Positions 43,901-64,000 of a DNA stretch of 64,000 bases are shown here, piece after piece. Where the stretch lies: contig NC_086123.1 in assembly GCF_963921235.1 (NCBI RefSeq), forward strand, positions 1,550,001-1,614,000. The letters run 5' to 3'. The translations under genes were made by a program, and so were the position numbers. Each line of letters begins with the position of its first letter. Position 1 is the first letter of the stretch. Below the pieces are notes generated by a model. That model was not told the origin of the DNA. It worked only from the letters and a program-made list of their open reading frames with translations, and did not search any database. The stretch is from Mobula hypostoma. Lineage: Eukaryota.

Positions 43901-44010
43901 AGTAATAATTGGTTCCATGATGTGTACTCACACCTGCTTAATGCAAAGATCAGACAAAACATGATTCCACTGATTCAGCAGGATTCTTTGGTCAGAGGAT
44001 GATGTCCCCA

Positions 44011-44215
44011 TCATGGGCTCCCTGGAGGGGTGGCAAATCCAGAGCTGTCACTGTCAGTGTCACTGGGGGTTGGAGATTGTGGAGTGCTCTCATCAGGGCT
44101 CTTGGTATTTCGAAATTTATTTAATAAAGTCATGTTGAAAGAAGATGCAGGAGAGTTCATTTCCCCTTGTTCTGCCTTGACCTTGGGGGTTTTGGATGGA
44201 GTCCCACCTGGAGAT
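44011..44215 (-). CDS. PRR11-like/NEMP-motif gene, last coding exon
   Basis: Polypyrimidine TTTTAG|(R)SPGGTPSKTPKVK...FNMTLLNKFRNTKSPDESTPQSPTP...GFATPPGSP-TGA; matches the PRR11-family RSPGGTP and LxxKF pattern. Confidence 0.85.
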
Positions 44216-46473
44216 CTAAAAGAGGAGGAATTGGAATTTAGGGAAGTACAGTTAGGAATGGGGAGTATTTACTGATAAGATGCATGCATAAAAGCAATCT
44301 GACCCCGCACAGTCGCTGAACACCAGGGGAGGCAAGCTTATTGACTCAGTCCGGCCTGGCGACCATCCAAATTAATAGCTATTTTAAAACAGAGCTACAG
44401 ATCAAATCTAACCCATGGCAACTCTGCACTTAACCCACTGGATATTCCACAATCTCCTGCCAGTGTGAGGGGTGTAGAGGAAGTGAACTGGGAAAGACAA
44501 TTGTGCGGGCTGAGGTGGAGGAGGCAGACGAGAAAGGGGTGGTGAGGACATGGGCAACAGTGCGTGGAAGCGACCAGTATCCATGGAAAGTTAAAGACTG
44601 CATCTTCCCAGAGGGATGCAGATGAATACCCCTTTATCTCCATCAGTGAACCAAGGTGGATGGATGAGCTGTTAAATTAATAGCAAAGCAGGCCTCCATC
44701 CTTCAGTTATGATCAACTCTAGTGCCCTCATGGCTCTTGCATGCACAGTGAAACTCAGCACAAGGGACGTGCGGCAAAAACAAATCTGCACGGTCTGTTC
44801 AATGGCTTCCCAGAGCCAGCACTTCACCTGCCTTGTCGCGACAGCAACCAACCCCAGCCTGTGGTTTTCTCTATCAAACTCCAACCACCTGGAGATTCAT
44901 TTTCTTGCAGGCATTTACAGGAAAAAAAGAAACAACAGAATTTTATGCGAAACTCTACATAAATAAAGATGGACAAACAGCCCATGTGAAAAATAAGATA
45001 AACTGTGCAATTAATAAAAAAAATACTGAAAATATGAGTTGTAAAGAGTCCATGAAAGTGAGTCTGTGTGCAAAATCAGTTCAGGAAAATGGCGATTGAA
45101 GTTATTCTGTGATTGTCAGGTAATAACTGTTCCTGAACCTGGTAAACACAAAATAATCTGCAGATGCTGGGGTCAAAGCAACACTCACAACATGCTGGAG
45201 GAACTCAGCAGGTCAGGCAGCATCCGTGGAAATGATGGTGTGGGACCAAAGGCTTCTGTATCTCTTACCTGAGACAAGCTTATTGCGAAGATAGTAGGGA
45301 TCTCTGATGACGACTGCTGTTTTCTTGTGACAATGCTTTATGTAAATGGTGGGGGAGGGCTTTGCCTGTAATGAACTGGGCTATATGCACCACTTTCTGT
45401 AGCCTTTTCCATTCCTGATTTCCCATACCGGTTAGGATTCTCTCCACTGTGCATCTATAGAAGTTTAATTGTTTTTGGTGACATCTATGAATCTATGCAA
45501 ACTTCTAAGAACGAAGCCACACTGTCATGGCTTCTTTGTGCTGGCACTTATGTGCTGGTCTCAAGATAGATCCACTGATATGATAACACCAAGGAATTTA
45601 TAGCTACTGCCATTTTCTACCTCCGTTCCTTTAAGAGAAGCCTGGTTCATGGACCTCTGGTTTCTTCCTCCTTTGCTTGACGATCCACTCTTCGGTTTTG
45701 CTGAGGCATCGAAAGCATTTCTGTTGCTTGGGTTCGCTTTGTACAGGCAATGACATTAACGACCTGCCACAGCTGTCAAGCATCTGTCTGTGATTCAAGT
45801 TTAGACTGATTTGCCACTTTTCATGTCAGATTGCTTTCCGGGTGTCAAACCTGGACCTCTTGTACTTTCCTGGAATGCCAGTCCAGAGCGACACCAGGAG
45901 ATTGAGTCTCCTGCTTCATCCAGGGCTTCTGACTGGGGAAGATTGCATGATTTTGTGAGGATGTACTTGTCCATGGGCATATTTATAAGGCCATGACAAC
46001 TGTAGTGCATTCATTCAGGTTCTCAGATGAGTCCTTGATTATAGCCCAATCCACCGACTCGAAACAATCCTGTAACCAGTCTACTGCCTCCCACGACCAT
46101 CTCTTTGTTGTCCTTGCCTCTGCTGCCTTGCTGTCTATCTCTGCCTATACTCAGGTAGGAAGAGGACAGCTAGATGATCAGATTTCCCAAAATGCAGCCG
46201 AGGGATGGTACGGCAGTCATTCTCGACGGTCTCAATCCTCTGCACCAGGTAGGACGTCTTTCAAAGGCAGTGCAAGGAGGCATCGTCCATCATTAAGGTT
46301 CCTACGTACCCTCTTCTCATTACTACCATCAGAGAGAAGGTACAGGAGTCAGAAGAACCACATTTTTAGGAACAGCTTCTTCTCTTCCACCACCAGGTTT
46401 TTGAATAGTCCTTAAACCCAAGAACACTACCTCAACTTTATTTTTGCACCATTCCATTTTTTATTGTAAATTG

Positions 46474-48050
46474 CAATGGTGCTAGAAAGTTTGTGAACCC
46501 TGTAGAATTTTCTCTATTTCTGCATAAATATGACCTAAAATCTGATCAATTTTTCATACAAGTCCTAAAACAAGATAAAGCGAACCCAATTAAATAAATA
46601 ACACAAAACATTATATTTGTTCATTTATTTACTGAGGAAAATGATCCAATGTATTTGTTGGAAGAAGTATGTGAATCTCTGGGGTAATGCCTTCTACAAA
46701 AGATATTTGGAGTCAGGTGTTTCAATCAATGAGATAAGATTGGAGATGTGGGTTGTAGAGGTGCCCTGCCCTACAAAAAAAGACACACAAAGTCAGGTTA
46801 CTGACAGAGCCTGTACTTTTAAGAAAGCCCTGTTTATGTGCACCATGCCTTGATCAAAAGAACTTTCTGAGGACCTTAGAAGAAGAATTGTACAGATGTA
46901 CGAAGCTGGAAAAGGCTACAAAAGCATTTCTAAAAAGACCCGAGTGTTCATCAGTCCACAGTAAGAGAAACTGTCTACAAATGGAGGAAACTCGGGACTG
47001 TTGCTACCCTCCCTAGGAGTGGGCAATCTGCAAAGATCACACCAACAGCATAAGGTGCAATGCTGAAGGAGGTGAGCCTGCAGAAATCTCTACAACTTGC
47101 TAAAGTCTCTGTTCATGTGTCCGCTATGAGAAAAACACAATAAGAATGGTGTTCACGGAAGGACACCGTGGAGGAAACCACTGCTCTCCAAATAAAAACA
47201 TTGCTGCACGTCTCAAGTTTGCAAAAGGCCACCTGCATGTTCTACAACACTTCTGGGACAATGTCGTTTGGATAGGTGGGACAAAAGTTGAACTTCTTGG
47301 CAGAAATGCACGTATGTTTGGAAAAAAAGGGGCACTGCACGTCAACAGCAAAACCTTACCCCAAACGTGTAGCATGTTGGAAGCAGCATCATGGTTTGGG
47401 GCTGCTTTGCTGTCTCAGGACCTGGACAGCTTGCAATTGTTGAGGGAATAATGAATTCAAAATTGTATCAAGACAGTTTACAGGAGAATGTCAGGCTAGT
47501 GATCTGTCACCTGAAGCCTAATTGAAGTTGTTTAATGCAACAAGACAATGATCTGAAAGACAAGAGGAAATCAAGAACATAATTGTTTAAAAAGAAGGAA
47601 GTTTGTGTTTTGGCATAGTCAAGTCAAGATCCCGACCTTAATCCTATAGAAGTGTTGTGGAAGGACCTGAAGCAAGCAGTTCATGCAAAGAAGCCCACCA
47701 ACATCCCAGAGTTGAAACAGTTTTGTAAAGAGGAACAGTCTAAAACACCACCAAGCCGATGTGCGGGACTGATCAACAGTTACCGGAAACATTTGGTTGA
47801 AGTTATTGCTCTAGAAGGGAGTCACACCAGTTACTGAAAGCAAAGGTTCACATATTTTTTACAACAAATACAACAAATACTTATTGGATCATTTTTCTCA
47901 ATAAGTAAATGAACAAGTGGCGTTACTTTTTTAATTGGGTTCTTTTTATCTAGTTTTAGGACTTACACAAAGATCTGGTCACATTTTAGGTCATATTTAT
48001 GCAGAAATAGAGAAAATTCGACACAGTTCACAAACTTTTTAGCACCACTG
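46474..48050 (+). mobile_element. Full-length decayed Tc1-like transposon with long TIRs
   Basis: CAATGGTGCTAGAAAGTTTGTGAAC / GTTCACAAACTTTTTAGCACCACTG|TA; ~200-bp inverted ends; transposase remnant ~46844-47837 (SKELSEDLRRRIV, QQDND, DLNPIEVLWKDLK). Confidence 0.92.
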
Positions 48051-48406
48051 TATCGTAACTTTTTTAAAGTCTTGCACTAGACTGCTGGCCCAAAACAGCA
48101 ATTTTCACAACATGAAAGCGTTGGTAAACCCAATTCTGATTCTCGAATGTGATTTCATCAGGGCTTTACATATCTTAAGAAAACAGCAACACACATTTCT
48201 GTGGACAGTTCTATCCCCTATTTAACGGAAAGAAAGTAGCTGTCTATTCATTTTTGCAACTCATGGACTGATACAGCACCTACAGAGGCTCTTTGGCCCA
48301 CCATGTCGATGCCAGCCGCAGAATATCCACCTATACTAATCCCACTTACAGCAGTTGGTCCCTTGCCTCTCATGGCCCCGTTTACACCAGAAATGCTTTT
48401 ACGTAC

Positions 48407-48523
48407 CTGTCAACCCCTGTTGAACGAAGCCTCTTAAAATGGTTTGCAGCCAGTAGCTCAGAGTGAATGCTCTTGACAGGATGAAGACTGTGCAGACTTT
48501 CAGGGTCTCTCAGATCGCCAATA
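48407..48523 (-). CDS. PRR11-like/NEMP-motif gene, coding exon 5 (WH2-like segment)
   Basis: TTTGTAG|SIGDLRDPESLHSLHPVKSIHSELLAANHFKRLRSTGVD+AG|GTACGT; 117 nt, phase 2-2; joins the next exon to give LRSTGVDRSPGGTP. Confidence 0.78.
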
Positions 48524-49984
48524 CTACAAACAGATCAGTTAACAAAGTAAATTAGAGCAGCTGCTATTATCATCAGTGATATTTCATTTCAGAAACCCCT
48601 GTTTTAATCCTCATTGTTTTGGACAAGAAAATGCAACTCATTGTCAGCAGCAACAATTTTTAGATCAGGTACAATGAGAAACAAAGTAAACCTCGACACC
48701 ACTGTGTCAGATTATTTATTTACCCCACAAACTAACTTGTATATCAAGTGAGGAGACAGGGCCTAGATTCTAGAGTTCAGAACAATGAGAGGTGTATAAA
48801 AAGCGTTGAAGGTTTTGACAGCTGATATTTCCCTGGACATCAGTGTTTCTAGGATCATGTGTCACAGTCTCAGTATATTATCATGGAGGTGAGAAGAAAT
48901 ATCCACAGAGTTTTTGGAATTCACAATCCAAGAGGACCTGAAGAAGGAAGAGGTAATCACAGCAGAGCAAATCTCCACCTGGAATTTATACAAGTTCCCC
49001 TGGCAGTAAATGACTCCAGATTATATTAATCAAAAGGTTCTGAGTGTAATTCTAAATACTATTAATAGAAGATTACTCCCCCAGTATGCTGGAATTTGGT
49101 GAAACTCCCACAGGAATCAGGAATCTTGGAAATACTGATCCAATTCAGTCTGCAAGATCTTCAGAGTATCTGAGGATCCAACTTTTCCACGTTTGGCTAT
49201 GATATGGATGCATCATTAGGACATTAGAAAGTTTTTGACATGAACAGACTATTCGGCCCAATAAAGCTTGCCAAATTCCCATTCACAAAGTGTGTTGAAG
49301 TAACTATCGAGTTTAGATTGGAAAGTCTCCAAAGTACAACTCTCAACTACACAGCAAGGTAGTTTGTTCCGTGTGTCCACAACTCGCTGTGTAAAGAAAT
49401 GCTTTCTGATGTTGGTCTGAAATCTCCCCTTAACCAGTCTCTGTGTCCTCGATGATGGATTAATTTTGAAGAGCAGCTGGCATCCATTTTATTTACACCC
49501 CTTAATGATTTTGAAAACTTCTATCATATCTCGTTACATTTACATCTATTACCCAAGTAAATTAACAAATAACTAGGTGTATTTACAACACAAGTTACAA
49601 AGTAAACAGTATAATGCCACCAGCGCTTCATGCGTGATGAGACCTTAGGTAGTGGCAGTGAGTTCAGTAGTCTTACGGCCTGGGGGACCTCCAAGAGAAC
49701 CACAAGCCTGTTGTTTGGGTTGGAGGCTTGCATACCTCAATGACCTGGAGAACTATGTTGGATGCGGTTAAAGCCTTGTGCTTTGATCTGGTAGAGGCCA
49801 GACTAACGGTGGTCCACTGCTCCTCCAGGTTCGGGGTTCAGCTCAGGACTAACAACCCTGACTGGTCAAAAAATTTGTTACGGAAACAGCAGTGAAGAAT
49901 CCTGTATCTGTGTGAGACAGTATTTCTAAGTCTCCACCTGCGATTTGTAGGACCGACAGTAGTGAACACCGAGAGGAAGCTGCT

Positions 49985-51305
49985 GGTCCTCACAATCCTT
50001 TGTAGCAACTAGCAGTTAGATGCCTTGCCAGACAGTGATGTAGCTGGTCAGGACATTCTCGATGGTGCTCCTGTAAACGTCTGTTAAAGGGGGGGTGGGG
50101 GAGCCTCACTCGTCTCAGGGACTGGAAACGCTCTGTGCTTTTTTGACCAAAGAGGTGGTGCTGAGGGACCAGGTGAGATCATCCATATGAGCACTCCCAG
50201 AAACCTGGTGCTCCTAACTCTCTCTACAGAGAAGCTGTGTATGTGCAATGAGGAGCAGTACGCCTGCACCTTCCTGAGGTCCACAATCACAGACATCCCA
50301 CCTCTCCCGGAAGTTCCAGGAGTCTCCTGCATATTGATAGCGGCTCCCTGATGCCCAGAAATTATATACAATATCCCGGAAATCGATTTTTTTGAGAGGG
50401 AGAGGGAGAGGGAGAGGGAGAGTGAGCATCCTGACTGGTCTCTCTTCGTGCTCAGTAGACCTATCAGTTCTCACTGTGGGCGGGCTTTACAGTCGACATC
50501 AAAAATAGTGACAGTGTTGCTCGCTGCACTGTTTGCAACAGTGACTTTTCTATTGCCCATGGCGGGTTAAAATGTAAAAGACATGTTGAGGTGAGTTTAA
50601 CAGGTGTCATTCGTTCATTAGTGTAGCTAATGTTATTTAAACTAGTTGGCTGGCTGCTAAGGAGCTACGCTATTGATGTCCTACGTGATGACACCAAACT
50701 CCCTGTAGACTTGCTTAAAGTTGTAATAGAATAAACATGTTAATATACACTTTGTAGTATAATGTAAGTACATATTTTAATGTCACATTTTCTGCATATA
50801 CCGAACTTGGTTTACAGATTAGACAAAATCACTAAACAAAGTATTACATACACCCTTGGAGGTCGACGGGGGGAGGGGGATATGGGTTTGAGAGGGGCAG
50901 GGGTGCTACCTCCCTGAAATGAGTTTTTGCAGGGTGGGAAGTCCACAATCATCTCATTGCCTTGTCCACACTGAGACTCAAGTTGCTGTGCTCGCACCAT
51001 TTTACCAGCCATCCTACCTTCTCTCTGTACGCCACCTCTTCCTCGTTGTCCATGAGGCCAGCCACTACAGTGTCATCAGGGAGCTTGTTGACTGGGTTTG
51101 AATTGGACCTGGCAGTGCAGTCTGGCTGAGCACGGAGCCCTGGGGAGCACCACTGTTCGGCATCAGTGATATTTCTGCCAACACGCACTGACTGTGGCCT
51201 TTCAAGAAGTCCCGGATTCAGTTACAGAGAGAGGTGTTGAGAACCAGCAAGGACAGTTTACCCACCAGCTTCTGAGGAATGATTACATTAAAAGCTGAGC
51301 TGAAG
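49985..51305 (-). mobile_element. Rex1/Babar-like LINE fragment interrupted by a hAT derivative
   Basis: DDTVVAGL..EEVAYREKV..WCEHSNLSLSVDK and FLGV remnants. Confidence 0.75.
50290..50943 (+). mobile_element. Non-autonomous hAT element retaining a BED zinc-finger fragment
   Basis: 8-bp TSD CACAATCA (50282-50289, 50944-50951); CAGACATCCCACC / GGTGGGAAGTC ends; ARCTVCNSDFSIAHGGLKCKRHVE at ~50517-50590. Confidence 0.75.
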
Positions 51306-51459
51306 TTTGAGTCTCATTTTCTTTTGAAAAATTCAGATATACAGTACAGTATAATCTTGATGCCTCACATCCAATTACAGTGCTCCATACCACAATCTAA
51401 TCTCCAAATTCTTCCCTCTACGTAACTGTACTCTCCAAATTCTTTGCTGAAGACTACTC

Positions 51460-52640
51460 AAAGTTCAAAGTAAAGTTTATTATCAGAGTACATACACATC
51501 ACCATATACAACCCAAAGATTCTTTTTCCTGCGGGCATACACAGCAAATCTATAGAATGGTAACTGTAAACAGGATCAATGAAAGAGCAAGAGCATAGAA
51601 GACAACAAACCATTGAAATGTTAATATAAGTAAATAGCAATAAATAATGAGAGCATGAACTGACAAGATAAAGAGTCCAGAAAGTGAGATCATTGGTTGT
51701 GGGAACATCTCAATAGATGAGTGTAGTTATCCTCTTTTGTTCAAGAGCCTGATGGTTGAGGGGTAGTAACTGTTCTTGAACATGGTGGTGGGAGCCCTGA
51801 GGCTCCTGTGCCTTCTGCCTGATGGCAACAGCGAGAAAAGAGCATGGCCTGGGTGGCGAAGATCTTTGATGATGGATGGTGCTTTTCCACGACAGCGTTT
51901 CATGTAGATGTGGTCATTGTCTTGGACTGCTTTAGCTGTGATGTATGGGGCCGAATCCACTATGACCTTTTGCAGGATTTTCCAGTCAAAGACACTGGTG
52001 TTTCCATAGCAGGCTGTAATGCAGCCCGTCAGCACACTTTCCACCAAACTTCTATAGAAGTTCTCAAGGTTTTCAATTACATGCCGAACCTCCACAGACT
52101 CCTGAGGAAGTAGAGGCGCTAACTTGCTTTCTTCGCAATTACATTTATATGATGGGTCCAGGACAGGTCCTCTGAGGTAGCGACACCCAGGAATTTAAAG
52201 TTACTGACCCCTCTACCTCTGATGAGTCTTGGCTCATGGACCTCTGGTTTCCCTTTCCTGAAGTCTTGGTCTTGCTGACATTGAGTGAGAGGTTGTTGTT
52301 ATGGCACCACTCAGCCAGATTTTCCATCTCCCTCCTGTATGCTGATTCATCACCACCTTTGATGCAGCCCACAACAGTGGTGTCATCAGCAAACTTGTAG
52401 AAGGTGTTGAAGCTGTACTTAGCCACACAGTCATGGGTGTAAAGTGAGTAGGGTTGGGGGCTAAGCACACATCCCTGTGGTGCACCTGTGTGAATGGGGA
52501 TTGTGGAGGAGATGTTTTTGCCAATCTGAAATGACTGGGGTCTGCAAGTGAGAAAATCCAGGATCCAGTTGCACAAGGTGTTATTGAGGACCAGGTCCTA
52601 AAGTTCACAGATCAGTTTTGAGGGAATGATGGTATTCCTT
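51460..52640 (-). mobile_element. Rex1/Babar-like LINE 3' portion
   Basis: [48 protein letters not shown] and FYRSLVESVLTGCITA..HPGHALFSLLPSGRR. Confidence 0.88.
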
Positions 52641-53121
52641 TACTGCCCATCCCTTTATTCCTACAGAATATCTAACACAAAAGATTTGCTTTTGATTCAA
52701 AGTAGGTGAATATATTTATTTATTTGTTTGTTTGTTTGTACCACAACGCACTGCCCCCAGGTCCTTTTACTAAAACACAATAGTAAATATTGGCTCACTG
52801 GTGAAAAAACCCTCTGTTCAGAGTAGTACCAAGATCTGATGGCATAGAAAGTGAACATCAACACTTTCTAAAGTCTGCACACAGCTATTGTGGCTCTGTG
52901 GAATAGTTGGATGCACTCCTGCAGCTTGCTCTTGTTAAAGTATCCACTCAGTGCTTCCAGGCAGTCAGAACTGGTCAACGGTGTAAGATGGCTCACATAC
53001 AACTAGACACTAATATATCTAAACACTGGGCAACCTGGAGACAGCAGTGAGAAACGCTTACAACGTTCGGCATCAAAATTCACATGTACGATGCTTCAAA
53101 TTTAATGTTTCACTCTCTCAC

Positions 53122-53198
53122 CTTTTTGAACGTCGATTCAGTCTGGCCAGTCCATAACTCTCCAGCAGATCGGGGGTTGCCAAGACCATTTGTTCTTT
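53122..53198 (-). CDS. PRR11-like/NEMP-motif gene, coding exon 4
   Basis: TTGCAG|KEQMVLATPDLLESYGLARLNRRSK+AG|GTGAGA; phases 0 to 2. Confidence 0.7.
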
Positions 53199-53798
53199 CT
53201 GCAAGTTTAGGGAAAGGCAGTGTGAATTTAGACCATAGGACACAAGAGCAGCATCAAGCTATTTGGCCCATTGAGTCTGCTCCACAACAGCGCAGGCACT
53301 TGAAATTTACTGAAGTAATTGTGAAACACTTGTTTCAAAGGACACGTTTCTATTTTTTCTTTAGAAAAGGGACAAAATACACAATCTTCCCACTCCTTTT
53401 GGTAACTTGTACATTCCTTTCCAATGGGTTAGTTTTCCCTGAACATACTAGAAACTTCAGTTTGTCAGTAGTGGCAACCTGTGCTAAGTGGCCATTTGGG
53501 TCATGGAAATGGGCTCTTACAGAATTCACAAATCACTACCCAAAAATTTGAGATACTAAATAGAGTTTATTTGCACTGTATTTTTTGGGGGAAATAAAAT
53601 AAAATAAATCTACTTTTTCTTTGATCTATGCGTAGATTATGTAGTTTTGCACAGCACAATATCGTGATTGGGACCATTTCTTAGGGAAGTAACACCTCCT
53701 CCCCCATAACATCAGGCTGAATGCATCTCTCCCTGTAGAGCAGACCTCCAGCCGCCAGCAAGCACAAAAACACACAAACCTGCAGTTCAGCTACTTAC

Positions 53799-54004
53799 TG
53801 TGCAGAGGTTGGACTTGTCTTTCAGAGGGGTTTTAAGAGGCAGTTTGCTGGAAGATGGAGGCGGTGGTGGTGGAGGAGGAGGAGGTGGAGGTGGTGGTGG
53901 AGGAACAGCAGATGTAAGAGAGGAACTGGCCCTTGTAGGACTCTCACTCTGTTCCTTCAGCCTTTTTTCAGCAAGTCGCTTGGAAGTTCTTTGTCCTTTT
54001 GCCT
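53799..54004 (-). CDS. PRR11-like/NEMP-motif gene, coding exon 3 (P16 tract)
   Basis: TTCCTAG|EAKGQRTSKRLAEKRLK...AV-P16-SSSKLPLKTPLKDKSNLCT|GTAAGT; phases 1 to 0; mixed CCA/CCT/CCG codons argue for coding constraint. Confidence 0.85.
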
Positions 54005-57002
54005 CTAGGAAACACAAACATCTCAATGAGCTCTTTTTAACTGGCGCTTAGATCAACTAATGGTGGCCTTGACTCTGATGAGGTCATGCAGAAGTGTGAA
54101 GATACAAACTCAAGGGGCAACTATCCCATAAATCATTTTGGCCAGAGGACAACAGAAGAGTAAGTGAATTATTATTTTTACAGTTCACATTAGCAACAAG
54201 TAACTTGCCTTCTCAAGAATTACAGAAGCAGAGGAGGGGCAGCGTGGCGTGGGGCGAGAAAGAATTCAATATTATTTAAAGCAGGGAATGTCTATCTGAG
54301 TTAAATGTCTCTCGTCCTCTTTGTTAAAATTATCTTACAACACCCTCAAAAGAGCAGGCACTAATCAGTAAGTTTATCCAGAGCAATATACATAAAATGC
54401 TGGAGGAACTCAGCAGGCCAGGCAGCATCGATGTGAAGGACTAAACAGTCAACGTTTCAGGCTGAGAATGGAAAGGAAGCGGGGAGAAGTGGTGGGGTGG
54501 GGGGAAGGAGGTAAGGAGCACAAGCCGGCAGGTGATTGGTGTAACTAGGTGAGGGGGTGAGAAACTGGGAGTTGATTGGTGGAAAAGGCAACAGGCTGAA
54601 GAAGGCGGCATCTGATAGGAGAGGACAGTGGACCATGGGAGAAAGGAAGAGAGGGGCACCACAGACAGATGATAGGCAAATGAGAAGGGTTTCTCAAACC
54701 AAGTGAAACTGTAAATTCAGTTCAGGAACAATGATTAGTTAAGGCTTACTCTCATTAAGATTAAGAATGCTGATAATTTCTAAAAATAAATTTCAAGTGT
54801 CTCCTTACAAATGGGAAAAATGGAACACTCTCACTCAGGCCCTTATTGTTCAACATCGCTGCCCAACAACATAAACACTAACCACTTTGTAAATCTTCTG
54901 ACAGAAGTTGTCTGAGCCATTATGGGACAGTGTGACAGCGTTCCATTGTCAATCTTTCTCACTATCTAGACTTACGACAGTTTAATAAAATGCTTTATTA
55001 GTCATACCTTTTCTCGAAAATGATCACTGCGATCAATAGCCTGCAGCTTCCCTTTCAGAGTTGAGCTTTTGAACCACCTGTACGACCTGGCATTTTGTGG
55101 CATGAGCAGAAGCCTAGAAGGTCCGGGACAGCTACGGCATGGTATGTGCATGCAGCGGGGCCCAGGTCCCAGAGCGGGGAGTAAGCGAATGTTTGGCTGC
55201 TGGAGAGGACTTGGAGGCGATTTGAAACAGCAGGGCCTGGGCCCGAGAGCAAGAACAAGCTGACGTTTGACCGATTAAAGCAGCTGGGTACAGGTCAATT
55301 CAAGATGGCGGGTCCTGAGCCCAACAGCGTACTGAAATAGCAGAGCCCGGGTTTGAGAGCGAGGAATTAGCTGCTGTTTGGCCATTTTAAACACCAGGCC
55401 AGATCGAAAAGGTCAGTGTGTTGGGGCTGGAGGCGAGGGACAGGCCGGTGCTCAGCCCGGTGAGGGTCAGTCATCTCTGCACTGAATTGAGGCTGTGGGC
55501 GGCCTGCAACTAACCGGCTCCTAGAGAGGCTGTGACCTCACTTTCATGAACTTCAGTTCTGAATGTTATTGGCTCACGATCACATGATTAGTTTTTTTTC
55601 TTGCACATTGGGTGTATGAAGGTTTTTTAAATGGGTTCTATTGGGGTTCTTTGTTTTGTGGCTGTCTGTAAGAAGGTAAATTTCAAGGTTTGAATTATTT
55701 CTCTCCATATTGCTGGCAATTATCTATAAGAGAGTGCACACTTGACCTCTTTCTCCATCACTTTGAACAATGTTTCCTCTCTGCAATTAAGCTTTCACTA
55801 ACAATATTTGGAAAGGAAGTGATCTGTCACGGGCTCTGCACATCCTTTGCGTATTGGAATAATTGGAAGTTGAGCTAATTTAAAGGCAAAGTGCAACATG
55901 TGGTCACTGGCCTGTCAGTTTTCTCCACTAAGTTATGCTAAAATATTCTTCCTATAGGAAGCCCAGGGAAGTATCATTGTCACTTCCTTACTGGGTAGTG
56001 GGGGTTGCAACTTTAGCACATCAAAATCCCACAAAATCAATCAAGTGTCAGGGAGAAATAAATTGTACAAACAGGGGTTTATGATTGCCAAACTCAGCGG
56101 GTTTCCTGTGACTTTTTGCCAATCGGCTGAAGATGATGACCATCATAGACAAAGAAAAAGTAAGAGGAGATACTAATTTGAATCGTCAGCTTCAGCTATG
56201 CTAGTGTAGACTCTAAATTCGCTTCTCTTCTATTGTTGCGAAGGCTCCTATAACAGGACCCACTATTTTTTTTTTGAGTAGAAGATTGCCTGTAGCAGTG
56301 GTAGTAACTGATTCAGACTGACAGTTGAACAGTAATATTTCCACTTCCCTACAACAACACTGTTCGACAGCCAAGATAGTCTGCAAACCTGCTCCTCACT
56401 GGAAACTCTACTTGTTGCGAGAGGTTCTCCAAAAATGTCAACCTGCAATGACATAAATGATCAGGTGGAGAAACAATCCACCTTCAGCGTGCCTGACAGA
56501 GATGAGGGGCAGCTGAGAGATCAGAGCAGCACGTATTCCAAAGCATGACGCCCAGCTGATGAGCAGCCAGGGGTTAGAAAAATGTTGGAGAGATGTACAA
56601 GGACAGGCACGGCCAGACTATACTGTAACCCTGCATCGGTCCTGAACCAGTAGATACAGCATTAGTTATACACAGTGAGCATCAGCAAACCTCAAGGGGT
56701 GGGGGTGGGGAAATTAACTACCCTAGATGCCAGTTGAAACAAACTGTGTTCCTCCAAGCATTGCCTGCATATTTCCTTTTATTTAATTAGACATACAGCA
56801 CAGAACAGGCCCTTCCGGCCCAATGAGCTCTCTGCCCAGTGACCCACCCATTAACACTAGCCTAATCACAGGACAGTTTACAATGACCTACTAACCAGTA
56901 CGTCTTTGGAATGTGGGAGGAAACCGGAGCACCTAGAAGAAATCCACATGTTCACGGGGATATTTGACTGACTCGGGGTTGAAAATTTGGCAGTGGACTT
57001 AC

Positions 57003-57126
57003 CACATGCATAAGTCTGCACTTTCATCATCTCATCCTTCAAACACTGTAGCCTGCCTCGCAACTCGTCCATTTTAACAGCATTACAGCGATTCATCCCA
57101 CCATCTATTGCTGAAAAGAACTTAGC
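57003..57126 (-). CDS. PRR11-like/NEMP-motif gene, coding exon 2 (predicted helical/coiled coil)
   Basis: TTTGCAG|AKFFSAIDGGMNRCNAVKMDELRGRLQCLKDEMMKVQTYAC+G|GTAAGT; phases 0 to 1 fit neighbours. Confidence 0.82.
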
Positions 57127-57545
57127 CTGCAAAGAAAATATTTAATAGTACATTACCCGCTCCACATTTATCATTTAGCTTAAAACATTTAAGTATTTAG
57201 TTTAGGAAACCGACACACGAATGTGTTAAATAACTTTAGTGATCTAACCTCTGCAGAGGTCTGGATATTGAGAATCAGGTTTGTTGTGTACTTAATATTT
57301 TAGTTATAATTGAGTAATATATATATATATAGATTAAGCATTCCTGTTGTCTAAATAATTAATTACAGGTTATATGCAAAAATACATTAATTGCATACGT
57401 CATCACACTACCACGTGATAGATGCATGCCCTTTTTAAAGTGAACTCGAACTAGACCCGTATTTCAGACTGCCCACGTCCTCATTTGAATTCATTTAATG
57501 TTTTGAAGTTATAAAATGTGCAAGGCTGATTGTTAAGGCTGAAAT

Positions 57546-57589
57546 GTGCAGTCCTGACGAAGGGTCTCGGCCTGAAACGTCGACTGCAC
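57546..57589 (+). ncRNA. Minimal type I hammerhead ribozyme motif, core intact, 8-bp stem I
   Basis: GTGCAGTC-CTGACGA-AGG GTCTCGG CCT-GAAA-C-GTC-GACTGCAC; predicted cleavage after C57581. Confidence 0.78.
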
Positions 57590-58949
57590 CTCTTCCTACA
57601 GATGCTGCTTGGCCTGCTGCGTTCACCAGCAACTTTGATGTGTGAAGGCTGATTATTTATTTTATTTGTATTTACTCAGTAGTACAGTTTGGAACAGGCC
57701 TTTCTGGCCCAACAAGCCACACTACCCAGCAGTCCACTTATTTAACACTAGCCTAATCACAGGACAATTTACAATGACTAATTAACCTGCTAGCTGGTAC
57801 GTCTTTGGACTGTGGTTGGGAACCCACCCGATCACAGGAAGAACATACAAACTCATACCAGAAATGAACTACAAAACTCCAACGGCCCGAGCCTGAACAA
57901 ACTGCTAGACTACCCTGGCGTCCCATCATCACCTACGCATGCCATGAAATTTGTGGTTTCATGGCAGCAGTACAGTCAGTACATTAAACATACCATAAAT
58001 ACAATAAGAAAATACGTACAGTGAATTCCAGTTAATTGGGACACATCAAGACCAGTACATTTTGGCCCAGTTAAGTTGCTGCCCCAATTAACTGAAGTTT
58101 CATGAATGTATAAAAAAAGACTAACTGCCATTTAACTGAATAACAAATTATGCATTTAAATGAGATACTGAACAAATTAGAGCACTAGCAATACCACTAC
58201 AGTACTATAAAACTGTGTAATAGTTCCTAATAGTTATCCTTGGAGGAATTTATCCAGTGTACACTGCCGTGTTCGTTTGTTCGACTGTAAATCAAAAAAT
58301 CAGTGGGGCACCTAGTGTAGATAGTGGACTGCCTTCATACGATGCTTTTGACAACTGCATCCTCCAAATCTTCATTTTCACTGTAACATTCAAGATGATT
58401 GTCAATGCCTTCAAATTCTTCATGTTCCTAATTTGCTGAGGCAGCAAAATCATTTAATTTTTACTCCCTGCCAATTCCGCCATCTTCAAGCCCAAGTGCT
58501 TCAAACTACAGTCAACAAAACAGTTCTGAAGGGTAATAATTAGATAAGAAAAGGGTAATAAAAAGGGATAAACAGCAACAAAAACGTATTTAAGCAGCTT
58601 TTATGACAGTAAGATGCCTCAAGGCACTTCATTGGAGTATTATTGATACTTGGCACCCAAGACATCTGATACCATTGCATATATTGAAGTCCTTGGAATG
58701 CTCCAGCCTACATGGGACATGGATAAGAGTTTTTGTTTACTATACGTACACTGTGCCTTCCTAGAAAAGGTAAGAATAGGATTCGATTGAGAGGTTTATA
58801 ATGTTGCCAAATAGTTCTTTAAAATATCAGCAAAAGATTTACAAGAAACTGATAACTAAAAATATAACAGGGAAGTGCACGAGCAAGAAATTTGATTAGG
58901 TTACATAAAACAAGTAATGGAAGATTAAGGCAGAAGAAGATATTACTAA

Positions 58950-60030
58950 TATCCGCTACTACGATGCTGCCTCACCTGTATCTCCTCCATTGTCCACATG
59001 TATACCCCCCCCCCATGACATAACAGGGACAGGGTTGTTCGCATCTACAACCCCAGAGGCCTCTGCACGCAGCACATCATCTTCTGCAACTTCCAACAGG
59101 ATCCCACTGCCAGGAACATCCTTCACAACCCTCACCTCCACTTCCTTTATCGACCACTCTCTTGGCAACTCCCTTGTCCATTCATCCCTCGCCACCGATC
59201 TCCCTTCTGGCACTTATCTCTTCAATTATAACAAATGCTACACTCGTCCCAACACTTCTTTCACCAGCATTCAGGGTCTTAAACAAGGGCTTCACCTGCA
59301 AGTCTGCTGGGTCATTTGTTGCTTCCAGTCTTCCCAACGGGGTCTCCTCTAAATCAGCGAGATCCAATAAAGGCTAGAGACCCCTTGTCAAACACTTTAA
59401 CTCTGTCTGCCATAACAATCTTGATTTCCAGGTGAACACCCATTTCAGTTCCACTTCCCATTCCCCCATCAACATGTCTGTTCACAGTCTCATTTACAAT
59501 CACAATGAGGCCAGATGCAGGAGGAGCAACACATCATATTCTGTATTGGTAGTCTCCAATCTGATGACATGAACATTGATATCTCTAACTTCTGGTAACC
59601 AGTCCCCTCTGTTTCTGCACACACACCTCCACACCACCAGCTTTATGTACCCTTATTCTGTTGGCCCTGTCAACCCTCATGGATCTGCCCATCATCTCCC
59701 TCTGGTTCCCCATGATCTACTATATTCTCATATTAGATTCCTCCTTCTTCAGCCCCTTACCTCTTCCACCTCTCACCTCCTAACTTCTCATTCCTCCTCC
59801 ACCACCCACCCGCCTTCCCCTCACCTGGATTCATCTATCAGCTTATCCTCCTCCCCTCCACCCCTCGCCTTTTTACTCTGGCTTCTGCCCTCTTCCTTTC
59901 AAACCCTGATGAAGGGTCTCAGTCAGAAACATCGACTGTTCACTTCCCTTCATAGATCCTGCCTGACCTGCTGAGCTCCCCCAGTACTTTGTGTGTGTGT
60001 AGCTTAAGATCTCCAGCATCTGCAGAATTT
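58950..60030 (+). mobile_element. Decayed Penelope-like element 3' part with degenerate hammerhead (~59905-59937)
   Basis: GIY-YIG C-terminal remnant similar to 9960-10060; CTGATGAAGGGTCTCAGTCAGAAACATCGAC. Confidence 0.75.
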
Positions 60031-60295
60031 TATATGACTAAAATCTCATGGTCTACACCAAAGGGATTTAAAAAGTCATAGCTACCGATATAATGGATGG
60101 AATTGTCACATCTTCTAAAATGGTTAAGGTTTAGAATTCTGACTATATTTTGGAAGGTAGTGAATCAGACTGTCAATAAAGGAAGGAGAGATAGAAAGGA
60201 GAGGCTTCTCAGCCACATTTTAGAATAATAATTCTTTCTGTGGCTTCTGGTGAAACCAGAACAACACGCCAACCAGATTCTGATTTCCATCTTAC

Positions 60296-60517
60296 CTTAA
60301 TAAAAGATTTCAATCCAGCCTTCTCCAGTTCCGCTTGTTTGCGTTTGCGCACCACCTTCTCACACAGCGATGGGTTCTGATCCATGGCGTGGAACAAGTC
60401 CTCCAGTGCCTTTTCTGTGTAAGTCAGTCCTTCAATCTCAAATTCTTCTTTACTCAGGCGCTTACAAAACATCTTACTCAGAGGATACTCTTGGTCAAAT
60501 TCTTCCAGAGTTTCCAT
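60296..60517 (-). CDS. Uncharacterised PRR11-like/NEMP-motif protein, coding exon 1 (join 60517..60296, 57126..57003, 54004..53799, 53198..53122, 48523..48407, 44215..44011; 951 nt, 316 aa)
   Basis: CAG acceptor (exon starts 60524), Kozak GCAATGG, METLEEFDQEYPLSKMFCKRLSKEEFEIEGLTYTEKALEDL...KSFIK, AAG|GTAAGA donor, phase 0. Confidence 0.85.
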
Positions 60518-62337: not shown

Positions 62338-63020
62338 TATTCCGATGACTTTGGTGTACCCTGGAATTATCCGAACTAACACTGTACACTGCATGAAGTT
62401 TCTCCTTGTTCACTTCGAAACAAATGTTTACTTAAATCGAATCAAATGTAATTTTCGCGTTAGAAAGACCACCATACTGTATGATTATCAGTGCTGAGTT
62501 GCAGGAATGACTCTTACCAGTAGTTTCAAAATTTGGCATATTATGCCCATAAGTGACTGAATGTTAAATTTTAATAATAGCATTGCGTAGCATCTTGGGA
62601 TATTTTCTATGTTGAAGTTGCTGTGTATGTTTAAATCACTGTTGTGCGTGTGCTCTTTTAGAAACGACATCATTTTACATCTTGGGAAACAACCAGCCGG
62701 TCCTACTCCAGATCAAACAGCACTACTGAAAGTGTTTGGAGCCGAGCAGAATTTTAAGAGACTACACTGTATCAATGCTGAGATAAGGAGCCACGGAGAT
62801 AAGTTATGCAGCAGAAAAATGTGACAGCGGTCAGATTACTTGGCCAAGGTATCATACAACACTGTTGCACGAGGACGCAGGCTCAACATAAACCACCAAG
62901 GTTGCGGAAATAAGTGACAGCAAACAATACACACAGTAGGCCCAATCACTTTGATGTTCTGAACGCCAAACATTTCACTGGGCATGAAGTTTGCAATTGC
63001 AACTTTACTACTTCACTTAC

Positions 63021-63340
63021 AAACAGTCCGCCGTGGATCAGTGAGTCGGAGGCGGCCGTGTAGACCCCGCTGCCCGGACAGGGTGATTCTGAGCGCCTTT
63101 CCCGGAGTTCAAGGCAGTGGCGGGAGCTGATCACAGACCACGGCCGGCTCCCATTGCTCTCCGGCCCGAAGAGGGAAGGAGCGGTGCGGCCGGGAGCAAT
63201 CGTCCCGTTCGCGGACACAAACCACTGCAGATGCTGGGGTCACAACACGCCGGCGGAGCCCTGAGGGGGACGGGGGACGGGGGACGGGGGACGGAAGGGG
63301 CAGAACCCTCCCGCCCGCAGGTTCACCGCTCTCGGCTCCG
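63021..63340 (-). other. Probable non-coding exon 1 of the PRR11-like gene (TSS approximate)
   Basis: GTAAGT donor at 63020 at the edge of a CpG island. Confidence 0.6.
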
Positions 63341-63550
63341 GCGCTGCCTCCAAACGGCAGAAAAGTCAAATCCCCGTCCTTCCACAACGAACCAATCCGG
63401 CTTGTCGGCAATTCAACTGGCCAATCAACTGCCGTCTTCTCGCAAATCAGCCAATTGACTGAGAGTTTGCCGGGAGTTTGACAGAGAGAGTGGCTAATCG
63501 GAAAGCGCCGCGACTCACGCTGATCCCGCCTCCCAACATGCGGTGCGGAT
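63030..63550 (-). promoter_or_regulatory. CpG-island promoter with three evenly spaced CCAAT boxes and MYB-like sites
   Basis: CCAAT at 63392, 63421 and 63451; CAACTG at 63414 and 63426; AAACGG near 63352; high CpG density. Confidence 0.7.
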
Positions 63551-64000
63551 AACGTTCTGTTAGTTTGTGTGTTAAAATACTGGAAATACTCATCTTTCGT
63601 TACATTTAATGTGGCATCAGATCAATGCATTTTCTTCCAAAATATTGAACGCCTCGTTACACAAAGTCCAGACCCTCTGTACAGTGGCTGTAGGGCCCTT
63701 CCTCACAACTAATTCCTGAATCCTGATGCGGGGTTTCGACCCCAAATTTCGACATTTCCTTTCCCCACCCCAACGTGGGGACGTTGTTTTTTTATATTGT
63801 TACTGCTCGAGATTCCAGCAGTATCTGCAAGTTGTGTTGTTTGGCTGTCCTAGGGAGTCTATAGCACATCCGGCTGGTGTACAGCTGTAGAGTTGTGTAG
63901 CACAGAAGGCAGCCATTCAGCGCATCACGTTTTTGCCAACTACACTCATCCCATTTTCACACATATTCTTCGTGTTTATTCAACGTCCTGTCTGAAATGT

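What the first reader, a model, noticed from the sequence alone, without database searches (positions are those of the whole stretch)
44011..60517. Uncharacterised 316-aa protein combining a NEMP1-like nucleoplasmic motif, polyproline, a WH2-like segment and a PRR11-type C-terminus
Seen: six GT-AG exons with fully compatible phases (0,1,0,2,2) give a 951-nt ORF that the ORF track shows only in pieces. It has no obvious hydrophobic transmembrane stretch. Recalled knowledge: KRLSKEEFEIEGLTYTEKALEDL aligns without gaps to RLLTEEEYRIQGEVETRKALEEL in the conserved nucleoplasmic C-terminal region of NEMP1/TMEM194A (11/23 identical by my count), a region reported to bind RanGTP and BAF. KRLRSTGVDRSPGGTP...LLNKFR matches PRR11 KLLRKVDVERSPGGTP...LRRKFQ, and PRR11 has been linked to Arp2/3 and F-actin. 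I know of no named mammalian gene with this combination. Inference: a soluble PRR11/MTFR-family paralog that may couple Ran, chromatin or nuclear-envelope cues to actin assembly in mitosis or meiosis.
Basis: partly seen in the sequence, partly recalled or inferred. Interest (0 to 1): 0.82.

Follow-up and report, generated by a model that had tools for sequence, protein, structure and literature searches.

The report
Stingray ortholog of mouse Todr1
The six-exon gene is real and is the ray version of mouse Todr1 (2610318N02Rik), an ancient, little-studied animal gene that humans lack; its front end resembles part of the nuclear-envelope protein NEMP, but what the protein does is still unknown.

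Summary
Six GT-AG exons on the minus strand (60517-44011) give a 951-nt ORF of 316 aa with phases 0,1,0,2,2. An RNA-seq contig from a related elasmobranch aligns to the window in six blocks that end at those exon ends. dN/dS against that cDNA is 0.20, and 0.09 in the N-domain.

The gene is not unnamed. It is the single-copy ortholog of mouse Todr1 / 2610318N02Rik, known only because DROSHA cleaves its mRNA in haematopoietic stem cells. Published work reports no human homolog. Orthologs run from a sponge to mammals, nearly all annotated as "uncharacterized LOC". Ray, Hypanus and kiwi all have the gene tail-to-tail with SIRT4.

The NEMP-like motif is supported at family level: 25 of 41 N-domains hit the last quarter of Pfam NEMP, best E 2.5e-4, in one register, but all below threshold. 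The ray sequence itself gives no hit. AlphaFold2 predicts a confident four-helix N-domain (aa 23-117) followed by a disordered tail.

The PRR11/MTFR-type C-terminus could not be tested against real PRR11 or MTFR sequences. Pfam gives no WH2 hit. Roles for Ran, BAF or actin remain speculation. This is a new member of a known, poorly characterised family, of moderate interest.

The parts
63021..63185 (-). Probable non-coding first exon (5'UTR); the 5' end is approximate
   Evidence: The 5'UTR of cDNA contigs L005/L006 gives collinear weak matches at about 63182-63025 (E 0.014, 0.27, 0.10). A GTAAGT donor starts at 63020.
62751..63750 (.). CpG-island-like stretch, the probable promoter
   Evidence: GC is 0.53-0.62 and CpG observed/expected is 0.8-0.94, against 0.15-0.4 in the flanks.
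60296..60517 (-). Coding exon 1 (aa 1-74): start codon, most of the N-domain, and the NEMP-like segment at aa 19-61
   Evidence: cDNA block 60517-60295 at 88.8% nucleotide identity. 123 representative homologs found.
57003..57126 (-). Coding exon 2 (aa 75-115): helices 3 and 4 of the N-domain
   Evidence: Best-scoring GT-AG candidate. cDNA block 57128-57003. AlphaFold2 helices 69-82 and 93-117.
53799..54004 (-). Coding exon 3 (aa 116-184): conserved R-x-SKRLAEKR basic motif, an 18-residue proline run, and the TPLKDK motif
   Evidence: cDNA block 54005-53798.
53122..53198 (-). It is present in jawed-fish orthologs, the coelacanth and lamprey, and is altered in the caecilian
   Evidence: cDNA block 53197-53122 at 90.8% identity. 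Alignment. No Pfam hit.
48407..48523 (-). Coding exon 5 (aa 210-248): the S-I-H-S-E-L-L ... K-R-L-R-S-T motif, a short predicted helix followed by a basic motif
   Evidence: cDNA block 48525-48407. Family consensus.
44011..44215 (-). Coding exon 6 (aa 249-316 plus stop): the RSPGGTP motif (its R codon is split across intron 5), the AFN..L..KFRN.(R/K)SP helix, the S/T-P cluster and the GFATPPGSP end
   Evidence: The cDNA block begins at 44217.
43547..44010 (-). 3'UTR; this is the minimum extent
   Evidence: The L005 cDNA alignment runs through the stop codon to 43547.
34274..38462 (+). Neighbouring SIRT4 gene, convergent (tail-to-tail) with the gene; used as the synteny anchor
   Evidence: Pfam SIR2 E 4.8e-50. 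Kiwi SIRT4 exons match 34283-35062 and 38322-38462. Kiwi and Hypanus show the same arrangement.

Best explanation
SHOWN. The locus encodes the batoid ortholog of mouse TODR1 (Target of DROSHA 1, 2610318N02Rik). This is a single-copy gene family found from a sponge to mammals. The product is a soluble, basic protein of 35 kDa (pI 9.1).
- Residues about 20-118 are predicted to fold into four helices. This is the best-conserved part and is under strong purifying selection.
- Residues 19-61 show weak but family-wide similarity to the segment that follows the membrane domain in NEMP proteins.
- The remaining 200 or so residues are predicted to be disordered and carry short conserved motifs: R-x-SKRLAEKR, a proline run, TPL-D, S-I-H-x-E-L-L...K-R-L-R-x-T, RSPGGTP, AFN..L..KFRN.RSP, and a terminal GF-x-TP. 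There are 13 Ser/Thr-Pro sites.

INFERRED (about 0.25 likely in this form). The protein works as a phosphorylation-controlled adaptor. The helical N-domain docks on a partner, for which a ligand of NEMP's nucleoplasmic region such as RanGTP is the obvious candidate. The tail recruits proline-binding proteins (profilin, SH3, WW or EVH1 domains). Through the helix-plus-basic motif it recruits either G-actin (WH2/thymosin-like reading) or importin-alpha (bipartite-NLS reading). Proline-directed kinases would switch the RSPGGTP site.

Mouse data place it in stem cells and spermatids and show that excess protein blocks myeloid differentiation.

My confidence that this is the Todr1 ortholog with this architecture is about 0.9. 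The number given for this field covers identity and mechanism together.
For: Identity:
- Mammalian hits to the family include a mole-rat ortholog whose UniRef name is 'RIKEN cDNA 2610318N02 gene', and mouse LOC70458 and mCG15632.
- BLASTP of Hypanus against mouse gives 47% identity over 117 aa, E 8e-36.
- The N-domain tree broadly follows the species tree; the second gar sequence sits directly beside the first, and no other species in the tree has two.
- PMC8784585 equates 2610318N02Rik with Todr1, describes a 918-nt ORF and a 34-kDa protein, and finds no human homolog.
- SIRT4 lies tail-to-tail with the gene in the window, Hypanus and kiwi.

Architecture:
- Conserved blocks from sponge to shark.
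- AlphaFold2 N-domain with pLDDT 88.5 and helices 23-47, 49-66, 69-82 and 93-117; the tail has pLDDT mostly below 60.
- No transmembrane stretch; 13 S/T-P sites.
- dN/dS 0.09 in the N-domain.

NEMP link:
- PF10225 is hit by 13 of 31 full-length proteins and 25 of 41 N-domains, best E 2.5e-4, always profile positions about 181-246 against window-equivalent aa about 19-61.
- NEMP1 region B binds RanGTP directly (PMC4422613).

Tail:
- NCBI auto-names several orthologs 'mitochondrial fission regulator 1-like' or '2(-like)'.
- Weak Pfam Mito_fiss_reg hits (4/31) and Thymosin hits (2/28).
- One PDB hit to the importin-alpha-binding GM130 N-terminal peptide, E 0.26.

Mouse biology.
Against: - Every NEMP match is below Pfam's gathering score. 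The ray protein and its closest homolog give none.
- I could not obtain a NEMP sequence, so I made no explicit alignment or profile-profile test.
- Whether the matched NEMP segment lies inside the Ran-binding region B rests on my memory of NEMP1. In NEMP1, neither half of region B binds Ran alone.
- There is no Pfam WH2 hit.
- The GM130 hit is not significant.
- Foldseek finds no solved structure like the N-domain: best E 5, TM-score at most 0.34.
- Amniote orthologs have LNPGGF in place of RSPGGTP, so that site is not essential everywhere.
- No clupeocephalan teleost, frog or anthropoid primate was seen among the hits listed, and published work finds no human homolog. This argues against a core housekeeping role.
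Confidence: 0.5

Rival explanations
1. The protein is a true mitochondrial fission regulator (MTFR1/MTFR2/MTFR1L type), as NCBI names several shark orthologs. It would sit on the outer mitochondrial membrane with MIRO, ARMC1 and TMEM11.
For: Automatic names 'mitochondrial fission regulator 1-like', '2' and '2-like' on orthologs. Weak PF05308 hits on 4 of 31 members, best E 0.018. From memory, the order coiled coil, polyproline, K-L-R...RSPGG, L..KF is shared with MTFRs.
Against: The best PF05308 score is 15.7 bits against a gathering score of 26.3, and the matches lie mostly on the proline run. The MTFR contacts with MIRO (F76 / LADI motif) and TMEM11 (K29, R35, R39) lie in the MTFR N-terminal part. 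That part is replaced here by an unrelated helical domain conserved since sponges.
Confidence: 0.08
2. The gene is simply the ray ortholog of PRR11.
For: PRR11 also has proline-rich regions and is linked to Arp2/3.
Against: Mouse and many other mammals have their own orthologs of this gene, and mammals also have PRR11 (background knowledge). The gene lies next to SIRT4 in ray, Hypanus and kiwi. I did not search the window for SKA2. The N-domain is found in a sponge and in echinoderms, molluscs and annelids.
Confidence: 0.02
3. The NEMP resemblance is compositional or convergent (Glu/Lys-rich helices). The N-domain would then be a generic helical or oligomerisation module, and the protein a cytoplasmic profilin/actin adaptor of the WH2/verprolin kind.
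For: All NEMP hits are sub-threshold and the ray sequence gives none. The same profile also picks up unrelated helical proteins such as PhoU, coronavirus S2 and TPR proteins at similar scores. UniProt labels one ortholog 'WH2 domain-containing protein', and NCBI auto-names others WIPF3-like or WASL-like. Echinoderm orthologs give Thymosin hits at E 0.029.
Against: NEMP is the top Pfam family by a wide margin (25/41 against 6/41) and is always hit in the same register. Compositional bias alone does not predict that. The Pfam WH2 model hits none of about 60 sequences scanned. The WIPF/WASL names most likely come from the proline run.
Confidence: 0.2
4. The conserved K-R-L-R-x-T-x3-R-S-P-G-G-T-P-(basic) motif is a bipartite nuclear-localisation or importin-alpha-binding signal gated by CDK-type phosphorylation, like the GM130 N-terminus. 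It is not an actin-binding element, and the protein is nuclear.
For: The only PDB match of the C-terminal profile is the GM130 peptide of entry 6iw8, aligned over K-K-L-R-E-Y-Q-Q-R-N-S-P-G-V-P. Many orthologs have a second basic cluster a few residues after the motif, such as TPKKP, PKKKPRSR or TPRK. Further basic clusters lie at aa 57 (RKRK) and aa 129. The NEMP segment it resembles is nucleoplasmic.
Against: E 0.26 is not significant. The importin-alpha and CDK1 roles of that GM130 peptide are from my own knowledge, not a tool result. From memory, MTFRs carry a similar motif yet are mitochondrial. Amniote orthologs have lost the S-P site.
Confidence: 0.2
5. The gene model is an artefact or a pseudogene.
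For: None found. The Pfam scan of the single exons found nothing significant.
Against: A cross-species cDNA matches all six exons. dN/dS is 0.20. Alignment to ten orthologs shows no gap at any junction. 123 representative homologs were found.
Confidence: 0.01

Closest known systems
Mouse TODR1 (Target of DROSHA 1; gene 2610318N02Rik, LOC70458) and its 'uncharacterized LOC' orthologs in other vertebrates and invertebrates
   Same: Orthologous. The N-domain is 47% identical over 117 aa, E 8e-36. The tree is species-like with a single copy per lineage. Size is similar: 35 kDa here against the published 34 kDa. The ancestral position beside SIRT4 is kept in the kiwi.
   Different: The ray protein keeps the ancestral tail (long proline run, K-R-L-R...RSPGGTP, KFRN.(R/K)SP, GFxTP end) that invertebrates also have. 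Amniote proteins have LNPGGF and a diverged tail. The mouse gene lies between Sdf2l1 and Ppil2, and the koala gene lies next to TOP3B. What is published about Todr1 concerns its mRNA (DROSHA cleavage) and an overexpression phenotype, not the protein's biochemistry.
NEMP family (NEMP1/TMEM194A, NEMP2; Pfam PF10225, formerly DUF2215): the nucleoplasmic segment after the last transmembrane helix
   Same: About 40-65 residues of the N-domain match the last quarter of the Pfam model in a constant register. 25 of 41 members match, best E 2.5e-4.
   Different: There is no signal peptide and no transmembrane region. Only part of the model is matched, and always below the gathering score. Binding of RanGTP and BAF is shown for NEMP1 region B only and is untested here.
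MTFR1 / MTFR2 / MTFR1L (Pfam PF05308 Mito_fiss_reg)
   Same: Shared overall layout of helical segment, proline run and C-terminal basic/SPGG and KF motifs (from memory). Automatic naming of orthologs as MTFR-like. Weak PF05308 hits.
   Different: Matches are below the Pfam threshold. The N-terminal domain is different, and the MIRO and TMEM11 contact residues described for MTFRs lie in the part that is not shared.
PRR11
   Same: Proline-rich regions and, from memory, a very similar ...ERSPGGTP...L..KF C-terminal module. PRR11 is linked to Arp2/3-dependent F-actin assembly.
   Different: PRR11 is a different gene: mammals have both, and the N-terminus and genomic neighbourhood differ. No tool-supplied PRR11 sequence was available, so I did not measure the similarity.
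WH2 / beta-thymosin actin-monomer-binding motifs
   Same: A short amphipathic helix followed by a basic L-[KR]-x-[TV]-type motif. Echinoderm orthologs give Pfam Thymosin hits at E 0.029-0.09.
   Different: The Pfam WH2 model hits no member, including the two ray segments in question. By my own reading, the spacing is one residue shorter than in the classical motif.

Membership tests
TODR1 / 2610318N02Rik orthologs | Significant full-domain similarity of the N-terminal ~118 aa to the mouse protein | tested here: met
   BLASTP of Hypanus (90% identical to the window protein) against mouse P0231: 47% identity over 117 aa, E 8e-36. phmmer of window aa 1-120 against mammalian members gives scores above 100 bits.
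TODR1 / 2610318N02Rik orthologs | Orthology rather than paralogy: one gene per lineage and a tree that follows the species tree | tested here: met
   IQ-TREE on 39 N-domains. Jawed vertebrates form a clade (96/92 support) with lamprey as its sister, inside a vertebrate clade (99/96), and invertebrates lie outside. The two gar entries sit side by side.
TODR1 / 2610318N02Rik orthologs | Conserved genomic neighbourhood | tested here: inconclusive
   Tail-to-tail with SIRT4 in the window, Hypanus and kiwi. In mammals the gene lies elsewhere: next to TOP3B in koala and between Sdf2l1 and Ppil2 in mouse. From memory, these human 12q24 and 22q11 segments are linked on chicken chromosome 15; I did not test that.
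NEMP (Pfam PF10225) | Match to the family model at or above the gathering score (28.7 bits) | tested here: not met
   The listed scores are 10.6-19.4 bits. The best E-value is 2.5e-4, whose score was not printed. Window exon 1 and P0131 give no hit.
NEMP (Pfam PF10225) | Signal peptide and multi-pass transmembrane region (region A) | tested here: not met
   The highest 19-residue hydropathy mean is 0.55. The protein starts directly with the helical domain.
NEMP (Pfam PF10225) | Conserved nucleoplasmic segment after the last transmembrane helix | tested here: inconclusive
   25 of 41 N-domains hit profile positions about 181-246 in one register, and NEMP is by far the top family. All hits are sub-threshold, and no NEMP sequence could be fetched for a direct profile-profile test.
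NEMP (Pfam PF10225) | Binding of RanGTP and BAF through region B | not testable with these tools
   Shown for NEMP1 only (PMC4422613). It needs pull-downs or complex prediction.
MTFR (Pfam PF05308 Mito_fiss_reg) | Match to the family model at or above the gathering score (26.3 bits) | tested here: not met
   Best 15.7 bits, E 0.018. 4 of 31 members match, mostly over the proline run.
MTFR (Pfam PF05308 Mito_fiss_reg) | N-terminal MIRO-binding (F76 / LADI) and TMEM11-binding residues | not tested
   Described in PMC11980836. No MTFR sequence was available to align. The N-terminus here is a different, NEMP-like helical domain.
PRR11 | 1:1 orthology (PRR11-type N-terminus, position next to SKA2) | tested here: not met
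   Mouse and many other mammals have orthologs of this gene that are distinct from PRR11. The neighbour is SIRT4. The window was not searched for SKA2.
PRR11 | Shared C-terminal ...RSPGGTP...L..KF module | not tested
   This rests on recalled PRR11 sequence only.
WH2 / thymosin-beta actin-binding motif | Match to Pfam WH2 (PF02205) or Thymosin (PF01290) | tested here: not met
   No WH2 hit in any scan. Thymosin hits 2 of 28 tails, best E 0.029, below the cut-off of 24.8 bits. The one score printed is 13.0 bits, for the sea star Patiria; the species behind the other hit was not listed.

The most novel reading that the evidence does not exclude
TODR1 is a soluble relative of the nucleoplasmic domain of NEMP, fused to the tail module that also occurs in MTFR proteins and PRR11. 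Its N-domain would bind RanGTP or another NEMP region-B partner. Its CDK-gated tail would recruit profilin-actin or importin-alpha. That would make it an ancient metazoan link between the Ran/nuclear-envelope system and the cytoskeleton in germ and stem cells, and it would explain why excess TODR1 blocks myeloid differentiation in mouse. A corollary is that PRR11 and the MTFRs arose from a TODR1-like ancestor by replacement of the N-terminal domain.
Probability: 0.12. Interest if true: 0.7.

Novelty: new member of a known kind. Interest (0 to 1): 0.4.

Why it matters
Todr1 is one of only two mRNAs whose cleavage by DROSHA is reported to be needed for mouse haematopoietic stem-cell function. 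Its protein has no known domain, partner or location, and it has been treated as having no human counterpart.

This work shows that the gene is ancient, running from a sponge to mammals. It has a well-folded N-domain under strong purifying selection that resembles part of NEMP, a protein family required for fertility. That turns an orphan gene into one with testable hypotheses: binding to Ran or other NEMP partners, a phospho-regulated tail, and a germ-cell role.

For annotation, elasmobranch genes now labelled 'mitochondrial fission regulator 1-like' would be better called Todr1 orthologs.

For the scan itself, the finding is a correct gene model of an already catalogued, poorly studied family, not a new kind of system.

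Tried and rejected
1. Pfam on the six exons one by one gave nothing significant, only a proline-driven Mito_fiss_reg hit at E 0.079.

2. PDB sequence searches found nothing real. I tried exon 1, the N-domain profile A2 (PhoU at E 0.0044 and coronavirus S2 helices, which I judged to be chance helical matches) and the tail profile A3 (only the GM130 peptide, E 0.26).

3. Foldseek of the confident N-domain model against the PDB gave a best E of 5 and TM-scores of at most 0.34. No solved structure resembles it.

4. The profile search with full-length alignment A1 was swamped by proline words and scored only 8000 candidates. It found no PRR11, MTFR or NEMP, although it did reveal the first mammalian homologs.

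5. I tried to fetch a NEMP1 exon from metagenome contigs, once with a degenerate pattern for K-A-L-E-E-L-R-E-F-C-N and once with the published NEMP1 RT-PCR primer. Both returned zero matches. No explicit alignment or hhalign between NEMP and TODR1 was therefore possible.

6. Three hits of the representative search (P0096, P0098, P0109) looked like proteins with a repeated N-domain. They proved to be TPR, LRR or other repeat proteins, that is, false positives.

7. I looked in the window for a homolog of the short-chain dehydrogenase gene nested in the kiwi ortholog. There is none.

8. I considered and rejected PRR11 orthology, true MTFR membership and a pseudogene or artefact (see the rival explanations).

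Full report

Yes. I rebuilt the model from the sequence. Stop-free segments on the minus strand gave four obvious coding pieces, and their splice sites fix the phases.

The two missing exons were found by listing every AG...GT open segment of the right phase and total length. Of 1682 pairs, one stood out clearly: 57126-57003 with 53198-53122.

The six exons are 60517-60296, 57126-57003, 54004-53799, 53198-53122, 48523-48407 and 44215-44011. They sum to 951 nt and encode 316 aa, with phases 0,1,0,2,2.

Independent support is strong.
- Two RNA-seq assembly contigs from a related elasmobranch, L005 and L006, carry an uninterrupted 324-aa ORF.
- They align to the window in six blocks that are consecutive in the cDNA. 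The block ends match my exon ends to within 1-2 nt, and the alignment runs on into a 3'UTR down to at least 43547.
- The protein aligns with ten shark, ray and chimaera orthologs with no gap at any junction. It is 90% identical to Hypanus sabinus LOC132404282, so the window comes from a stingray-like batoid.
- dN/dS against the cDNA is 0.20 overall and 0.09 for the first 118 residues.
- No transmembrane stretch exists: the highest 19-residue hydropathy mean is 0.55.

That stretch ends in a GTAAGT donor and lies in a CpG-island-like region. The start codon is preceded by a polypyrimidine tract and a CAG acceptor. The gene therefore probably has a non-coding first exon.

**2. What is it?**

A HMMER scan of exon 1 against 1.84 billion representative proteins gave 123 hits. 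These were mostly proteins of about 300 aa with the match at the N-terminus.

Named members are almost all 'uncharacterized protein LOC...' or carry automatic names driven by low-complexity sequence: MTFR1-like, MTFR2-like, WIPF3-like, WASL-like, extensin-like. They come from:
- a sponge, echinoderms, a hemichordate, molluscs, annelids and a nemertean;
- lampreys, chondrichthyans, sturgeon, gar, bowfin, bichir and osteoglossomorph teleosts;
- coelacanth, a caecilian, a newt, lizards and ratite birds;
- many mammals.

Among the mammalian entries are a mole-rat ortholog whose UniRef name is 'RIKEN cDNA 2610318N02 gene', and mouse LOC70458 and mCG15632. The literature equates 2610318N02Rik with Todr1, 'Target of DROSHA 1'. 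It has a 918-nt ORF, encodes a 34-kDa protein and lies between Sdf2l1 and Ppil2. [quoted passage not shown] The authors found no human homolog.

Other papers add three points. The human ortholog is listed as 'N/A'. A mouse knockout has a bone-density phenotype. Expression in the testis rises toward the tubule lumen together with Prm2 and Odf1.

Orthology rests on the following.
- BLASTP of Hypanus against mouse gives 47% identity over 117 aa, E 8e-36.
- The N-domain tree broadly follows the species tree, with one gene per lineage.
- The gene lies tail-to-tail with SIRT4 in the window, in Hypanus and in the kiwi. In the kiwi the order is MSI1, PLA2G1B, the gene, SIRT4.
- Mammals have moved the gene: it is next to TOP3B in koala and between Sdf2l1 and Ppil2 in mouse.

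**3. Anatomy**

The family alignment shows conserved blocks from sponge to ray:
- an N-domain of about 118 aa;
- R-x-SKRLAEKR;
- a proline run;
- TPL-D;
- S-I-H-x-E-L-L...K-R-L-R-x-T;
- RSPGGTP;
- AFN..L..KFRN.RSP;
- a GF-x-TP end.

AlphaFold2 with the family alignment predicts four helices (23-47, 49-66, 69-82, 93-117) with pLDDT 88.5 for the isolated domain. The tail is low-confidence apart from two short helices at the SIHSELL and LLNKFRN motifs.

The ray protein is 35 kDa, has pI 9.1 and carries 13 Ser/Thr-Pro sites.

Amniote orthologs keep the N-domain but have LNPGGF where other lineages have RSPGGTP.

**4. The NEMP claim**

Across the family the picture is different. PF10225 is the top Pfam family by far. 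It is hit by 13 of 31 full-length proteins and 25 of 41 isolated N-domains at E<=1, with a best E of 2.5e-4. The next family is hit by only 6 of 41.

All scores are below the gathering threshold, because only the tail of the model is matched.

I rate a shared, probably homologous module as likely, at about 0.65. Membership of the NEMP family fails outright, because there is no membrane domain.

NEMP1 region B binds RanGTP directly, and neither half of it suffices alone. Whether the matched segment lies within region B rests on my memory of the NEMP1 sequence. I could not obtain a NEMP sequence to check.

**5. The PRR11/MTFR and WH2 claims**

Orthology to PRR11 is excluded. Mouse and many other mammals have orthologs of this gene as well as PRR11 (background knowledge), and the neighbourhood is SIRT4.

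True MTFR membership also fails. The best Pfam PF05308 score is 15.7 bits against a threshold of 26.3. The MTFR residues that contact MIRO and TMEM11 lie in an N-terminal part that is not shared.

The similarity of the tail motifs to PRR11 and MTFR is plausible from memory and from NCBI's automatic names. I could not measure it.

The WH2 idea gets no Pfam WH2 hit in any of about 60 sequences scanned. There are only two sub-threshold Thymosin hits; the one that can be traced belongs to the sea star Patiria.

The only PDB hit of the tail profile is a GM130 N-terminal peptide (entry 6iw8), aligned over K-K-L-R...R-N-S-P-G-V-P at E 0.26. From my own knowledge, that peptide binds importin-alpha and carries a CDK1 site. 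The hit is not significant, but it suggests a different reading: a phospho-gated bipartite nuclear-localisation signal.

**6. How it most likely works**

Shown: this is a soluble protein with one folded helical domain under strong constraint and a disordered tail built of short conserved motifs and many proline-directed phosphorylation sites.

Inferred, at about 0.25 in this form: the protein is a phosphorylation-controlled adaptor. The N-domain docks on a partner, for which RanGTP or another ligand of NEMP's nucleoplasmic region is the candidate. The tail recruits proline-binding proteins and either G-actin or importin-alpha.

The mouse data (stem-cell and spermatid expression, and harm from excess protein in haematopoietic progenitors) fit a dosage-sensitive regulator and not an enzyme. 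No anthropoid primate, frog or clupeocephalan teleost was seen among the listed hits, which argues against a core housekeeping role.

**7. Novelty and verdict**

The gene model is right. The protein is indeed biochemically uncharacterised. But it is the ortholog of a named mouse gene, and related species already carry predicted entries for it. That makes it a new member of a known, poorly studied family.

None of the 16 papers in the library that mention Todr1 or 2610318N02Rik appeared, from their titles and the passages I read, to describe three things: the family's depth (back to a sponge), its NEMP-like N-domain, or a tail shared with MTFR and PRR11. I read only six of those papers, and only the passages around the gene name.

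Noticed in passing
window 4368-6415 (-): Two large ORFs with PP-loop ATPase, zinc-ribbon_14 and TtuA-type LIM matches. This is most likely the CTU1 (cytoplasmic tRNA 2-thiolation protein 1) gene.
   Followed up: partly
window 34274-38462 (+): SIRT4 gene (Pfam SIR2, E 4.8e-50). Its exons match kiwi SIRT4 at 34283-35062 and 38322-38462. It is convergent with the Todr1 ortholog, with about 5 kb between the 3' ends.
   Followed up: yes
window 31319-31804 (-): A 161-aa ORF with a Tc5/pogo-type transposase DNA-binding domain (HTH_Tnp_Tc5, E 1e-9). It lies just upstream of the SIRT4 ORF and is a Tigger/pogo-like element or a domesticated copy.
   Followed up: no
window 45000-52600, introns 4 and 5 of the gene: The introns are full of repeat-derived ORFs. 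One is a reverse-transcriptase fragment at 52145-52576 (-) (RVT_1, E 2e-11). By eye there are transposase-like remnants at about 47146-47837 (+), but Pfam gave no hit for the 47146-47451 ORF.
   Followed up: partly
window 16057-16269: The only run of N in the window (213 bases). It lies outside the gene and I left it untouched.
   Followed up: no
window 100-507 (+) and 63117-63458 (+): Two ORFs of 135 and 113 aa with no Pfam match. The second lies inside the CpG-island-like promoter region of the gene and is probably a by-product of GC-rich sequence.
   Followed up: no
L003 10001-10918 and L004 6278-7195 (mouse DNA): The full 305-aa mouse protein (mCG15632) is encoded by one uninterrupted 918-nt stretch of genomic DNA, with an L1-type fragment nearby in the metagenome contig. 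The record's accession and length (89.3 Mb) suggest to me chromosome 18 and not 16, but I did not confirm this. Orthologs elsewhere have introns. This may be an intact intronless retrocopy. No poly-A run of 12 or more bases was found.
   Followed up: partly
L002 12427-16680 (-) (kiwi): A short-chain dehydrogenase gene (adh_short, 290 aa) is called on the opposite strand inside the kiwi ortholog. The ray window has no counterpart.
   Followed up: yes
P0004, P0008, P0026, P0034, P0160, P0161 (amniote orthologs): Amniote proteins keep the N-domain but have LNPGGF in place of the otherwise near-invariant RSPGGTP site and have a diverged tail. The tail's function may therefore have changed or relaxed in amniotes.
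   Followed up: partly
family distribution: The distribution looks patchy. No clupeocephalan teleost, frog or anthropoid primate appeared among the listed hits, and all named bird hits were ratites. Strepsirrhine primates, a colugo and a tree shrew do have the gene. This is consistent with the published failure to find a human homolog, but only 120 of the 191 mammalian-query hits were shown.
   Followed up: partly
tail profile A3 against PDB entry 6iw8 chain A: The K-R-L-R...RSPGGTP motif aligns with a GM130 N-terminal peptide (K-K-L-R-E-Y-Q-Q-R-N-S-P-G-V-P) at E 0.26. From my own knowledge, that peptide binds importin-alpha and holds a mitotic CDK1 site. The hit is not significant, but it is a lead for a phospho-gated nuclear-localisation signal.
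   Followed up: no
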